64,000 nucleotides of DNA from Sminthopsis crassicaudata (taxonomy: Eukaryota): assembly GCF_048593235.1 (NCBI RefSeq), contig NC_133617.1:393766067-393830066 (forward strand). Reading direction: 5' to 3'. Of the stretch, positions 46,953-50,000 are shown piece after piece. A program made the translations under genes and the position numbers. Position 1 is the first letter of the stretch, and each line of letters starts with the position of its first letter. Under the pieces are notes generated by a model. It was not told the origin of the DNA and searched no databases. It worked only from the letters and a program-made list of their open reading frames with translations.

Positions 46953-47001
46953 ATGGGCCTCCCCACCCAGTTCCTGGCTCTGCTGCCGGGACTCTGCCTT
47001 G
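46953..47001 (+). CDS. MSLNL-like signal-peptide exon
   Basis: Perfect Kozak gccATGG. MGLPTQFLALLPGLCL + G, hydrophobic core. Donor G|GTGAGC, phase 1. Confidence 0.85.
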
Positions 47002-50000
47002 GTGAGCTGAGGGGCTGGGCAGCCTGACCCGATGAGCCTTCTCTCTCCCCTTTCCTCCTCTTCTCCTGTCCTGTCTTCCTAATCTCTTCTTTCTCTACGT
47101 GAAACATAGAATCTCCTACATGGAAGAGACCTTAAAGATTATCTAGTCCATACTCCATCTACCCCATCTCCACCTTTATTTTTAATCGGTGAGGAAAATT
47201 GAATTCAGGGAAGACAAATCTTGCCCAAAGTCACTTGTGGCAGAGCTGAGAATGGAATCCAGGGCTCGTGACTCTCCAGTTCCGGGCTGCCTTTGTCTCC
47301 CTCTATCCCCCAATTTTCTATCGACTTCCTTGAAGTGAAGGAGGCTCTGAGGAGAGGGAATTAGCATAGGATAAATTCAGCCAGTTGTGATGACCCCAAG
47401 GGGTCCCCAGAACATACCTTTGCCTGTTTGTTTTGAGGGTATCTCCCTTTAGCCCCGGTGTCCACCCTTCCTCCATTCCTCCTGAGAGCAACATGTGTAG
47501 CTCCTTCCTTGTCTTCACCCCTGCTGTACAGGGCTGTCCTGGGCTGCAGGGAACAACCCCACCATGGGGAACAGTTCTATCCTGGGGATTATCAGAACAG
47601 GGACTACCACCAAAGGGACCAACGCCACTACAGAGACCACCGTGGGGAACAATGCCATCACAGAGAACAATGGCACCCCGGCCAGCAACTCCATTCTGGG
47701 GAACAGTGCTACCACGGGGAACAACAGCACATTGGACTACAAAATCACCTTAGAGACCAAACATGTCTTGGGGAACAACGCTACCATGGGGAACAACAAT
47801 GCGGTTACAGGGATCAGTGCCATCACAGAGACCAAAATCTCGGGGATCAGCAATATCATGGGGAACAGTACCATCGCAGAGATCCATATCTACCTGGGGA
47901 GCAAAACCCGGGTGACCAACAGTATCACGGAGAGCACTACCGTCGCAGGGACCCTGGGGAACAAGAGCTCAGAGAGCAACGCTTCCATGGGGAACAGTGT
48001 CACCACCGGGAAGCGAACCTTGCAGATCAAGAATATCTTGGGGAATATCACCACCGACAGTCAAGCCCCGGGAAACAGCGATATCTTGGGGAGCCGTTCC
48101 ATCACCGAGACTCAAGCCACGGAGAACAACGGTACCTCGGAGAGCAGTTCCACCACCGCCACTCGAGCCACGCAGATCGCTACCTGGGGGACCAACGCCA
48201 TCACCCCAGAGAACGCTTACGGCACCCAGGAGAGCGTCTCCACGGGGACCAGCACACCCTTGGGGAACAGCACCTTCTTGGGGACCAGCGCCATCACAGA
48301 GAACAAAATCCTGGAGAATACCATCACCGAGAACACTGCCGTGGGGAACAGTTCCACCATAGAGAGCAATGCCATTCTGGAGAGCAGACTTACCACAGAG
48401 AACCTCGACACGGGGAGCAAAATTTCCGAGAACGTCACTCTGGGGAACGGCACCACAAGGAGCCGTGTCTCCATGGGGATCAGCGAAGACACCTTGGGGA
48501 ACAATGCTACCATGCATCAACTCTTGGGGAGCAATGCCACCATGGGGAGCGCCAGCACAGGGAGCAAAACCTTGGCGAGGACTATCAGCCCTTTGGAGGA
48601 AGACACACTGGTGAGTTAGAGCTACGGGGCTGGAGGGAGGGGATGCTATGATCCAAGGCTCTTTCTGAGTCATGTTCCTCCCATGTGCTCTCCTGGCTCT
48701 GAGCTCCTCCAGAAAAATAAAGGCAGCATCCACAGCCACCGACCGTACCACGGCTCTGTCTGGTGGTGAGGGTCACACAAGCAATGCCCTCCAAGGGCTT
48801 AGCAAACCCATGTCCTAGGAGGGAGCGGGGTGGGCCCGGCGCCATGATTTCTATGGCAGCAGGATCTTGCAATCAGGAAACTCCCTAACTACATAAAATA
48901 AGTACACAAATCAAACATTTGCTGATGAGAAATCATGACTTTGTGACCTCCATATTCAGCGATGAGACCCTTCATGGGCTGCAACCTTACAGTTTAAGAA
49001 GCTGGGTAATCTAAAGTTTGGTTCGAGTAGAAATTAAGTGATTTGCCTGGCCCGCACGCCTAGGATGGGTTAGAATAGAACATAAATCCAAGTTTTCCTT
49101 TCTGCAAGGCCAGCTCTGGAATACAGAACACTGCCTCTGAAAAAGGCTGTTACCAGTATTTATCATCCTCATCCTCATCAGAGCTGGAGTCCAGGGTATC
49201 TTGTGGCATGGGGAGGAACAGGCATATCAAGGACTAACATGAACTGAACCAGACTGGTTTGGGCTTGGGGATTTGCTTTTAACACATGGAGGAATTTGAC
49301 TCAAAGGAAAGAACTCTAAACTGGGTTCTGGTGGTACCTTTGCCCTTAATTTTCTGTTTGGAGCTAAAGTTTGCCTCCTTTCTCTGGGATTTGTTCTCAC
49401 TTTCTGTCAGATGAAAGTGATAGACACCTGTTTCCCTCTGGGGATTCCTTCAGAAATGACATAACTGTTGGGAATATGGTCTCTAAATTGTACAGCTCTG
49501 TATATAGATATGTATGAAGAATTATTATTCTAAAGACGTGGCCCATGTCTCTTCCTTCTCCTAGATCCCCCCAAAGCGTAACCCAGAATAGACAAGGAAG
49601 TGGCTTAGGAAAGATGGCAGGATGGTGGGGAGTAAAGCCAAGATTCATCTCATCAGATATTCCTTGTTTCTTTTCTCTCTTAGTGCCGGGATTCTGGGAT
49701 AAACGGTGAGTGTCTAATCTCTCAGATGCACATACTTTCTATTTTCCTTGGGACATTCTGAGTCAAGAATCCTCACTATACTTCCCTTTTTCTCCCCATC
49801 AGAAACAGCACTGTGCCGTGGTGAGCTCAGGTAAGGAGCACATTATTTTGCTTTTTGGGGGGCAAGGCAGTCGCAGGGGTGGGAGGTCACATAGCCAGTA
49901 AGTGTTGAGATTTGATTTAGATCCTCCTAGCTCCAGGGCCAGTGCTCTATCCACTGTGCTACTTAGTTTCTGATCAGGCCAGACCAGGATCTCGGGTGGG

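What the first reader, a model, noticed from the sequence alone, without database searches (positions are those of the whole stretch)
47001..49830. A frame-switch splicing circuit: alternative acceptor (+31 nt) and a 22-nt microexon cancel each other
Seen: the phase-1 signal exon joined to the strong acceptor (47532) gives frame A, which leaves in phase 0 and needs the 22-nt microexon (49684-49705) to enter exon 49803 correctly. Joined to the weaker TAG acceptor (47501), it gives MGLPTQFLALLPGLCLAPSLSSPLLY…, also a plausible signal peptide, in frame B. Frame B leaves in phase 1 and is exactly in frame with exon 49803 if the microexon is skipped (+31-22 = +9 nt). Mixed combinations hit premature stops; for B plus microexon it is a TGA in exon 49803. 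Inference: coordinated splicing could swap the entire ~360-aa N-terminal domain on the same mesothelin-like body. Caveat: the 47500 acceptor is weak, with two AGs just upstream, and a 1-in-3 chance phase match is possible.
Basis: partly seen in the sequence, partly recalled or inferred. Interest (0 to 1): 0.8.

Follow-up and report, generated by a model that had tools for sequence, protein, structure and literature searches.

The report
Two-frame exon; proposed splice circuit unsupported

Summary
The window is Sminthopsis crassicaudata, gene LOC141549801, the 5' part of a mesothelin-like gene.

**The proposed circuit.** Assembled RNA contigs from four runs show 47001|47532, 48610|49684 and 49705|49803. 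They also show an unforeseen 48610|49565 junction. None shows 47001|47501 or 48610|49803. All 23 annotated isoforms in five marsupials keep the microexon peptide.

**Frame B is real.**
- Tammar wallaby models translate the orthologous exon in frame B for 218 codons.
- Dunnart versus Antechinus replacements fall 2:42:3 on frame-A codon positions 1:2:3. Position 2 is frame B's wobble. Control exons give about 29:27:7.
- Pairwise omega is 0.42 for B (p=8e-4) and 1.5 for A (not significant).

**How frame B is most likely reached and ended.** Frame B is probably entered from a distal first exon (40295-40341, ends in phase 2). A 35-nt cassette exon restores frame A. In the observed RNA forms B ends just after exon 2, most often in a 141-nt long form of exon 3 that carries stops in both frames. 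That predicts a stand-alone protein of about 380 aa, an INK4a/ARF-like arrangement, not a domain swap.

It was not found on other DNA.

The parts
40295..40341 (+). Coding part of the distal alternative first exon (exon 1'): MGSGRGPGVFALGNQ + GG. It ends in phase 2 (donor GGG|GTGTGA). Joined directly to 47532 it reads exon 2 in frame B.
   Evidence: Sequence. tblastn of NCBI isoform X1 and of wallaby and opossum N-termini at 87-94% identity. Phase computed. Wallaby isoform X6 (P0011) has this peptide joined directly to frame B. Run X7 holds 2 of 7 sampled words of 40215-40341.
41836..41870 (+). 35-nt cassette exon (acceptor CAG|C, donor CAT|GTAAGA). Its inclusion converts phase 2 to phase 1, so exon 2 is read in frame A (NCBI isoform X1, P0004).
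46953..47001 (+). Coding part of the signal-peptide exon (MGLPTQFLALLPGLCL + G), ending in phase 1. The exon reaches upstream to at least 46823.
   Evidence: Junction 47001|47532 in an X6 contig covering 46823-47000 plus 47531-48602. NCBI isoform X2. The orthologous wallaby exon is also read in a second frame that exits in phase 2.
47498..47500 (+). TAG of the proposed weak alternative acceptor (exon start 47501, +31 nt).
   Evidence: Present in the sequence. Weak context. No junction to it in four runs.
47532..48610 (+). Exon 2, 1079 nt, a degenerate repeat open in two frames. Frame A is Thr/Ser/Asn/Gly/Ile-rich and is the annotated frame. Frame B is His/Gln/Arg/Glu/Gly-rich: about 32 G[ED]x-anchored units, no Met, 12 Cys, GRAVY -2.0.
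   Evidence: Selection on frame B. Control exons.
49565..49705 (+). 141-nt long form of exon 3, using an upstream acceptor (CTCCTAG|A). It has stops in both frames: A at TAG 49589-49591 (tail IPPKRNPE*), B at TAA 49579-49581 (tail DPPKA*).
   Evidence: Junction 48610|49565 in X5 (depth 1320) and X7 (depth 16.8). Translations.
49684..49705 (+). 22-nt microexon (short form of exon 3). Frame A needs it to reach exon 4 in frame.
   Evidence: Junctions 48610|49684 (X6) and 49705|49803 (X5, X6, X7). Its peptide C..[SP]GIN is present in all 23 annotated isoforms of five species.
49803..49830 (+). Exon 4, 28 nt, entered in phase 1.
51897..51948 (+). Exon 5, 52 nt (SGESAENISLRDFICQK).
   Evidence: Contig pieces in X5 and X6..
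53161..53304 (+). Exon 6 (RAQGSPLNREE...DILVQ), the start of the part shared with long mesothelin-like orthologues.
   Evidence: The loose end of the X5 contig behind 51948 matches its first bases.

Best explanation
Exon 2 (47532-48610) is a two-frame exon of the INK4a/ARF type. The frame is set by which 5' exon is spliced to the single acceptor at 47532, not by an alternative acceptor.

Frame A route. The signal-peptide exon ends in phase 1 and gives frame A. Frame A is a poorly conserved Thr/Ser/Asn-rich linker. It needs the 22-nt microexon to run on into the mesothelin-like body.

Frame B route. The distal exon 1' (40295-40341) ends in phase 2 and gives frame B when joined directly. A 35-nt cassette exon (41836-41870) switches it back to A. 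Frame B encodes a His/Gln/Arg/Glu-rich repeat protein, and this is the frame that purifying selection preserves across marsupials.

How B ends. In the RNA forms seen, frame B ends just after exon 2. Most often this is in a 141-nt long form of exon 3 that carries stops in both frames. The predicted product is a stand-alone protein of about 380 aa without a signal peptide, not a body with a swapped N-terminal domain. Choice of 5' exon and choice of exon-3 acceptor go together across samples.

Shown: the junctions, the phases, and the selection signature on frame B.
Inferred: that exon 1' joins directly to exon 2 in dunnart, that the ATG of exon 1' starts frame B, and that the protein exists.

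For: Identity and models.
- Exon-2 frame A is 100% identical to XP_074135831.
- All three dunnart isoforms use 47532 plus the microexon and differ only in their 5' exons.

RNA.
- X6: signal-peptide exon | 47532, and 48610|49684.
- X5 (depth 1320) and X7: 48610|49565.
- In X5 and X7 the signal-peptide exon is essentially absent (depth 0.43 and 0). In X6 it is present (6.6, against 9.9 for exon 2).
- An X7 contig carries 58 nt from outside 46700-52100 joined at 47532.
- X7 holds 2 of 7 sampled words of exon 1'. That is the number expected if about 58 nt of exon 1' are present.

Phases.
- Exon 1' + exon 2 gives MGSGRGPGVFALGNQG-AVLGCREQ... in frame B.
- With the 141-nt exon 3 the first stop is at aa 380.

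Wallaby.
- P0011 has the same exon-1' peptide joined directly to frame B.
- The frame-A and frame-B translations are mutually consistent for 218 consecutive codons. This allowed reconstruction of the wallaby DNA.

Selection.
- Dunnart versus wallaby differences at frame-A positions 1/2/3 are 20.9/34.4/17.9%. Amino-acid identity is 64% in B and 54-56% in A.
- Changes nonsynonymous in A but synonymous in B run at 0.193 (transitions) and 0.097 (transversions). The reverse class runs at 0.098 and 0.028.
- Maximum-likelihood omega: B 0.42 (p=8e-4), A 1.49 (not significant), C 0.86 (not significant).
- Protein-inferred single-step replacements by frame-A position: Antechinus 2.3/42/2.7, wallaby 24/80/4, bilby 28/89/4, opossum 37/111/4.
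- Downstream control exons give about 29/27/7. Fisher tests give p from 1e-5 to 7e-4.
- The pattern holds in all thirds of the exon.
Against: - The direct exon 1'|47532 junction was not seen as such in dunnart. The single read-laying run did not cover 40 kb, and the 58-nt 5' piece of the X7 contig was not printed.
- X5, the highest expresser, is not listed as holding exon-1' words, so its 5' exon is unknown.
- Frame B has no ATG inside exon 2. If the 5' exon of a transcript lacks an in-phase ATG, the first AUG is 47564. That AUG is in frame A and has a strong Kozak context.
- With the 141-nt exon the stop lies 114-124 nt upstream of a splice junction, which predicts nonsense-mediated decay. 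Yet this form is the abundant one.
- DNA-level selection tests rest on one reconstructed orthologue (654 nt). The other three comparisons see only changes that alter frame A.
- There is no protein-level evidence.
Confidence: 0.6

Rival explanations
1. A minority of transcripts use the TAG acceptor at 47501 together with microexon skipping. The result is a secreted protein with the frame-B domain on the mesothelin-like body.
For: - The arithmetic is exact, and both mixed combinations hit stops.
- Frame B is under selection to the very end of exon 2, so it must exit the exon somehow.
- Contigs cannot exclude rare isoforms (tool note).
- Wallaby models show that frame B fused to the body is at least annotated in one species.
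Against: - Neither junction appears in four runs.
- The acceptor has 50% pyrimidines, upstream AGs, and lies upstream of the tract serving 47532.
- No such isoform exists among 23 models in five species, and all keep the microexon peptide.
- Frame B is reachable without this acceptor through a phase-2 5' exon.
Confidence: 0.06
2. Frame B is fused to the mesothelin-like body by a different compensating event, as in the wallaby models. There a phase-2 5' exon is paired with a 256-nt internal intron of exon 2. Domain swapping would then be the function and the stand-alone form a by-product.
For: - Four wallaby Gnomon isoforms (P0010, P0011, P0013, P0014) read 218 frame-B codons, then return to frame A by skipping 85 codons plus 1 nt.
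- Those boundaries are compatible with GT..AG: a Val codon at the donor and ACA-G|AG at the acceptor.
Against: - These are computational models, and their RNA support could not be checked here.
- They lack a signal peptide, which makes little sense for an extracellular mesothelin-type body.
- The wallaby donor is not conserved in dunnart (CAGGAGAGCGTC at the homologous place).
- Dunnart contigs cover exon 2 without any internal junction.
- The frame-B constraint persists through the segment that the wallaby internal intron would remove.
Confidence: 0.1
3. There is no frame-B protein. Frame B is open only because the exon is a degenerate repeat whose founder unit lacked stops in that frame, as in a mucin VNTR. 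The annotated frame A is the only product.
For: - The exon is repetitive.
- Stops are rare in most frames: 0, 3 and 0 on the plus strand, and 2 and 6 in two of the minus frames.
- Searches for frame B in protein databases, Pfam and the Atlas gave nothing.
Against: - Repeat inheritance cannot produce a between-species substitution pattern with frame-B wobble periodicity.
- It cannot explain omega_B 0.42 against omega_A 1.49.
- It cannot explain an 18-fold deficit of position-1 against position-2 replacements between two dasyurids while control exons give 1:1.
- Frame C, equally repetitive, has 3 stops and omega 0.86.
Confidence: 0.06
4. The excess of changes at frame-A position 2 reflects diversifying selection on a glycosylated frame-A domain (turnover among Asn, Ser, Thr and Ile), not constraint on frame B.
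For: - Omega_A is above 1.
- Many position-2 changes interconvert Asn, Ser, Thr and Ile.
Against: - Positive selection on A does not explain why sites synonymous in A evolve slowest (transversions 0.028 per opportunity).
- It does not explain why position-1 replacements are almost absent between dunnart and Antechinus (2.3, against 42 at position 2).
- The number of N-x-S/T sequons in A (17) equals the expectation from frame B alone (16.5 +/- 2.8).
- Position-2 changes include radical ones such as I/N, T/M, E/G and S/L (alignment).
Confidence: 0.05

Closest known systems
CDKN2A (p16INK4a / ARF): alternative first exons spliced to a shared exon 2 in different frames
   Same: One acceptor and one shared exon. 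The phase of the upstream exon decides the frame, and the two protein sequences are unrelated. This rests on established knowledge. CDKN2A is cited as the textbook case in bioRxiv 10.64898/2026.05.28.727796.
   Different: - The overlap here is about 360 codons in a single repetitive exon.
- One frame (A) is an unconserved linker of a secreted mesothelin-like protein, while the unannotated frame carries the constraint.
- A 35-nt cassette exon and a choice of exon-3 acceptor add further switches.
- Protein products are not demonstrated.
GNAS XLalphas / ALEX overlapping frames
   Same: Several hundred codons of two overlapping frames lie in one large 5' exon, and both products are low-complexity and disordered (from my own knowledge).
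   Different: ALEX and XLalphas come from one mRNA through two start codons. Here the frame is apparently set by splicing of different 5' exons.
[quoted passage not shown]
   Same: A frame-shifting splice event upstream makes a downstream exon code in a second frame. Some such regions show constraint in both frames (bioRxiv 10.64898/2026.05.28.727796; PMC1868773).
   Different: The mean overlap in that survey is 34 codons, and the longest is 573 codons over five exons. This one is about 360 codons in one exon. Residue-level constraint is detectable only in the non-annotated frame.
Mesothelin family (PF06060), long-form mesothelin-like (MSLNL-type) genes of marsupials
   Same: Orthologues in wallaby, bilby and opossum (1550-1747 aa) carry PF06060 and begin with the same signal peptide, frame-A repeat, microexon and following exons. 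Exons at 53155-63663 of the window align to them at 62-96% identity.
   Different: The NCBI dunnart model stops at 53829 and is named 'uncharacterized'. The two-frame exon has no detectable counterpart outside marsupials in the searches run.
MUC1 VNTR frameshift protein
   Same: A repeat exon is open in an alternative frame (from my own knowledge).
   Different: In MUC1 the alternative frame is open only through repeat identity and its product is pathological. Here the repeats have diverged and the alternative frame shows purifying selection.

Membership tests
Compensating frame-shift splicing pair as proposed (47501 acceptor + microexon skipping) | Junction 47001|47501 exists in RNA | tested here: not met
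   Only 47001|47532 was seen (X6). No contig in four runs starts exon 2 at 47501. Contigs can miss rare forms.
Compensating frame-shift splicing pair as proposed (47501 acceptor + microexon skipping) | Junction 48610|49803 (microexon skipping) exists in RNA | tested here: not met
   Only 48610|49684 and 48610|49565 were seen. All 23 annotated isoforms in five species contain the microexon peptide.
Compensating frame-shift splicing pair as proposed (47501 acceptor + microexon skipping) | The two events together restore the frame, and each alone gives a premature stop | tested here: met
Compensating frame-shift splicing pair as proposed (47501 acceptor + microexon skipping) | The two events are coupled on single molecules | not testable with these tools
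   This needs long-read cDNA.
Dual-coding exon set by alternative 5' exons (INK4a/ARF type) | Both frames are open over the shared exon | tested here: met
   Frames A and B have 0 stops in 360 codons.
Dual-coding exon set by alternative 5' exons (INK4a/ARF type) | Alternative upstream exons with different phases join the same acceptor | tested here: inconclusive
   - Signal-peptide exon (phase 1) | 47532 is shown.
- Exon 1' ends in phase 2.
- The direct join is annotated in wallaby.
- It is consistent with the X7 contig and word share.
- The dunnart junction itself was not read.
Dual-coding exon set by alternative 5' exons (INK4a/ARF type) | Purifying selection on the second frame (B) | tested here: met
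Dual-coding exon set by alternative 5' exons (INK4a/ARF type) | Purifying selection on the first frame (A) | tested here: inconclusive
   There is no residue-level constraint (omega 1.49; the class synonymous in A is the slowest). Frame A is nevertheless open in five species, whereas frame-B-preserving shuffles give a mean of 2 stops and P(0)=0.03.
Dual-coding exon set by alternative 5' exons (INK4a/ARF type) | Both proteins are made | not testable with these tools
   This needs Ribo-seq, mass spectrometry or antibodies.
Mesothelin family (PF06060) | Significant match of the gene product to the Pfam Mesothelin model | tested here: inconclusive
   Single-exon ORFs of the window gave no Pfam hit. 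The full-length orthologues that these exons align to carry PF06060 as a precomputed annotation.

The most novel reading that the evidence does not exclude
The locus is a three-way switch. Promoter or 5'-exon choice is mechanistically coupled to the choice of exon-3 acceptor. The outputs are (i) a secreted mesothelin-like protein with a frame-A linker, (ii) an abundant stand-alone frame-B His/Gln-rich protein conserved for about 80 million years yet missing from the annotation of four of the five marsupial species examined (in wallaby it appears only fused to the body), and (iii) in at least some lineages a true domain swap that places frame B on the mesothelin-like body through a second, compensating frame-shifting splice.
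Probability: 0.15. Interest if true: 0.8.

Novelty: new member of a known kind. Interest (0 to 1): 0.6.

Why it matters
If frame B is translated, marsupials have a conserved and, in at least one sample, very highly expressed protein. No annotation lists it as a product of its own; only the wallaby models translate this frame, and then fused to the body. Every other pipeline picked the frame that joins the signal peptide to the mesothelin-like body.

It would be one of the longest single-exon dual-coding regions known in a mammal. It is also an unusually clean case in which the annotated frame evolves as a passenger of the hidden one.

There is a practical lesson for annotation and for dN/dS scans. 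An apparent omega above 1 in a 'mucin-like' exon can be the shadow of an overlapping frame.

The specific +31/-22 circuit matters less. It is an arithmetical possibility without RNA support.

Tried and rejected
- Orthologous genomic DNA. The look-up of encoding contigs found no record for P0005 and P0006 because only the longest isoform is indexed. It found the genes for P0009 and P0012 but returned no DNA because the files are too large. As a result, conservation of the 47499-47500 AG, of frame-B openness outside wallaby, and of the exon-3L stops could not be tested directly. I worked around this by reconstructing 654 nt of wallaby DNA from its two overlapping translations. I also inferred nucleotide changes from frame-A protein differences.
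- Frame-B homology. The protein search gave no hit within the length limits. Pfam gave no family for either frame beyond noise. The ESM Atlas gave only low-complexity look-alikes scoring under 0.82.
- Tandem Repeats Finder found only short sub-arrays (51-nt and 18-nt periods), so the exon is too degenerate to describe as a clean array.
- Literature. Nothing was found on marsupial mesothelin-like dual coding.
- Rejected: frame B open through amino-acid composition or codon usage (shuffle test).
- Rejected: general depletion of stop triplets for splicing reasons. Frame C carries 3 stops, close to its shuffle expectation of 4.6.
- Rejected: sequon-driven selection on frame A.
- The second sequencing-run run, on exon 1', gave only indirect support: 7 sampled words, with X7 holding 2 and X5 none.
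Full report
**1. What the window is.**
Exon-2 frame A (47534-48610) is 100% identical to Sminthopsis crassicaudata XP_074135831, 'uncharacterized protein LOC141549801 isoform X2', 524 aa. It is 85-88% identical to Antechinus flavipes 'mucin-22-like'.

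Mapping the NCBI protein to the window gives these exons:
- E1: 46953-47001
- E2: 47532-48610
- E3: 49684-49705
- E4: 49803-49830
- E5: 51897-51948
- E6: 53161-53304
- E7: from 53629

Long orthologues in tammar wallaby, bilby and opossum (1550-1747 aa, Pfam Mesothelin) begin with the same exons. Exons of that body lie at 56146-63663 of the window.

**2. The observation.**
- The signal exon ends in phase 1.
- With acceptor 47532, exon 2 is read in frame A and leaves in phase 0.
- With the TAG acceptor (exon start 47501, +31 nt), it is read in frame B and leaves in phase 1.
- A + microexon and B + skip are in frame with exon 4.
- B + microexon stops at a TGA in exon 4.
- A + skip stops in exon 5.

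The acceptor at 47501 is poor. It has 50% pyrimidines against 75% for 47532, and AGs at -12 and -14. It also lies upstream of the pyrimidine tract of the acceptor actually used.

**3. RNA evidence (Logan contigs of four runs, 46700-52100).**

Junctions found:
- 47001|47532 (X6)
- 48610|49684 (X6)
- 49705|49803 (X5, X6, X7)
- 48610|49565 (X5 at depth 1320, X7), which was not foreseen

The last junction defines a 141-nt long form of exon 3 (49565-49705). It has a better pyrimidine tract than most acceptors here. It carries a stop in frame A (TAG 49589-91, tail IPPKRNPE*) and a stop in frame B (TAA 49579-81, tail DPPKA*).

No contig shows 47001|47501 or 48610|49803.

In X5 and X7, exon 2 is expressed but the signal-peptide exon is not: depth 0.43 against 1320 in X5, and 0 in X7. 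In X6 the signal-peptide exon is joined to exon 2 and the microexon form is used.

Across these three samples, then, the signal-peptide exon goes with the microexon, and other 5' exons go with the 141-nt form.

Contigs drop rare variants, so absence is not proof. X1 covers introns evenly and behaves like DNA or pre-mRNA.

**4. The unexpected support for frame B.**
Aligning orthologues showed that four NCBI wallaby isoforms (P0010, P0011, P0013, P0014) translate the orthologous exon in frame B (AVLGCRDPPHHGEQ...). The wallaby isoform with the signal peptide (P0009) uses frame A.

The two wallaby translations satisfy the overlapping-frame constraints for 218 consecutive codons. This let me reconstruct 654 nt of wallaby DNA, with only 15 ambiguous third positions.

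How the wallaby models enter frame B:
- From the conserved distal first exon (MGSGRGPGVFALGSQG) joined directly.
- Or through the signal-peptide exon read in a second frame. Its dunnart homologue is 46919-47001, open in that frame but without an ATG.

How they return to frame A: by skipping 85 codons plus 1 nt inside exon 2. The boundaries are compatible with GT..AG.

However, these are computational models without a signal peptide. Their donor is not conserved in dunnart, and dunnart contigs show no junction inside exon 2.

**5. Which frame does evolution see?**

Dunnart versus reconstructed wallaby DNA:
- Differences at frame-A codon positions 1/2/3 are 20.9/34.4/17.9%. Position 2 is frame B's third position.
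- Amino-acid identity is 64% in B against 54-56% in A.
- Nei-Gojobori omega is 1.67 for A, 0.32 for B and 1.14 for C.
- A pairwise maximum-likelihood codon model with kappa gives A 1.49 (not significant), B 0.42 (p=8e-4) and C 0.86 (not significant).

Rates by mutation class, per opportunity:

| Class | Transitions | Transversions |
|---|---|---|
| Nonsynonymous in A, synonymous in B | 0.193 | 0.097 |
| Synonymous in A, nonsynonymous in B | 0.098 | 0.028 |
| Nonsynonymous in both | 0.089 | 0.070 |

Being synonymous in A buys nothing. Being synonymous in B doubles the rate.

An independent test needs only proteins. For each frame-A replacement reachable by one nucleotide change from the dunnart codon, I recorded the codon position.

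| Comparison | Position 1 | Position 2 | Position 3 |
|---|---|---|---|
| Antechinus | 2.3 | 42 | 2.7 |
| Wallaby | 24 | 80 | 4 |
| Bilby | 28 | 89 | 4 |
| Opossum | 37 | 111 | 4 |

- Among transitions, B-synonymous changes are fixed 4 to about 60 times more often than B-nonsynonymous ones (p from 1e-6 to 1e-12).
- The same procedure on downstream single-frame exons gives 29:27:7, 32:22:5 and 29:28:8.
- Exon 2 against control gives p from 1e-5 to 7e-4.
- The bias holds in all three thirds of exon 2, including the segment that the wallaby internal intron would remove.

Within dunnart:
- T never occupies a frame-A third position before an AA/AG/GA codon: 0/118 against 49/241, p=9e-10.
- Synonymous-codon shuffles expect 14 frame-B stops.

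The reverse test for frame A:
- Given frame B, frame A is expected to have about 2 stops, P(0)=0.03.
- Its 17 N-x-S/T sequons are exactly what frame B's sequence yields by itself.

Frame A is therefore probably kept open, since it links the signal peptide to the body in five species. Its residues are not conserved.

**6. How frame B is reached in dunnart.**
- Exon 1' (ATG at 40295, ending at 40341, donor GGG|GTGTGA) ends in phase 2. Joined to 47532 it gives MGSGRGPGVFALGNQG-AVLGCREQ..., which is frame B.
- The 35-nt exon 41836-41870 shifts this to frame A, which is NCBI isoform X1.
- Frame B contains no Met in exon 2, so an upstream ATG is required.
- X7 has a contig with 58 nt of sequence from outside the laid stretch joined at 47532.
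- X7 also holds 2 of 7 sampled words of 40215-40341, the number expected for about 58 nt of exon 1'. This is consistent with a direct join but does not prove it.
- X5, the highest expresser, holds none of these words, so its 5' exon remains unknown.

With any observed exon-3 form, frame B ends 5 or 14 codons after exon 2. The predicted product is a protein of about 380 aa. It is very hydrophilic (GRAVY -2.0), rich in His/Gln/Arg/Glu/Gly, has about 32 G[ED]x-anchored units and 12 Cys, and has no signal peptide.

**7. Verdict.**
The proposed +31/-22 circuit is not supported by RNA or by annotation, and the phase match is most likely a 1-in-3 coincidence.

The core intuition survives and is strengthened. 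Exon 2 has a second, meaningful frame that is selected by splicing. The best-supported mechanism is an INK4a/ARF-like arrangement:
- the phase of the 5' exon sets the frame;
- a 35-nt cassette toggles it;
- the exon-3 acceptor decides between continuing into the mesothelin-like body (frame A only) and termination.

Dual coding through upstream frame-shifting events is a known kind (PMC1868773; bioRxiv 10.64898/2026.05.28.727796). In that survey the mean overlap is 34 codons. This is a long (about 360 codons) new member in which the unannotated frame carries the constraint.

The main gaps are the start codon and 5' exon of the abundant transcript, the predicted sensitivity of the 141-nt form to nonsense-mediated decay, and the lack of any protein evidence.

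Noticed in passing
window 49565-49705: The microexon has a 141-nt long form that uses an upstream acceptor. It is the dominant junction in two of three expressing runs and carries stop codons in both frame A and frame B. The NCBI isoform proteins seen here do not show it.
   Followed up: partly
window 46919-47001 (and the wallaby orthologue): Wallaby isoforms X4 and X5 read the signal-peptide exon itself in a second frame (SCSLGG...AAGTMPW), which exits in phase 2 and leads into frame B. Wallaby has an ATG there (MPW). Dunnart has CTG at the same place.
   Followed up: partly
window 53820-53835: The NCBI dunnart model ends at TAG 53827-53829 by reading past a plausible GTAGGT donor. Wallaby, bilby and opossum orthologues continue into a roughly 1,100-aa mesothelin-like body, and exons of that body are present at 56146-63663. 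The dunnart gene model is probably truncated.
   Followed up: partly
window 50314-50460: This short stretch has enormous contig depth in all runs (up to 33,000) with many loose ends and spurious joints. It is an interspersed or simple repeat in intron 4, not part of the gene.
   Followed up: no
window 41275-41554: A 280-base run of N lies between exon 1' and the 35-nt cassette exon. I left it as it is.
   Followed up: no
runs X1-X4 on window 46700-52100: These runs are labelled 'RNA?' but cover introns and exons at the same depth (about 19) without spliced contigs. They behave like genomic DNA or nuclear pre-mRNA and give no splicing evidence.
   Followed up: no
window 47564: The first ATG inside exon 2 is in frame A, has a strong Kozak context (cccaccATGgg), and is conserved in five species. 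NCBI uses it for the 'X3'-type isoforms that lack a signal peptide. Such transcripts may be the ones whose first AUG actually lies in exon 1' and reads frame B.
   Followed up: partly
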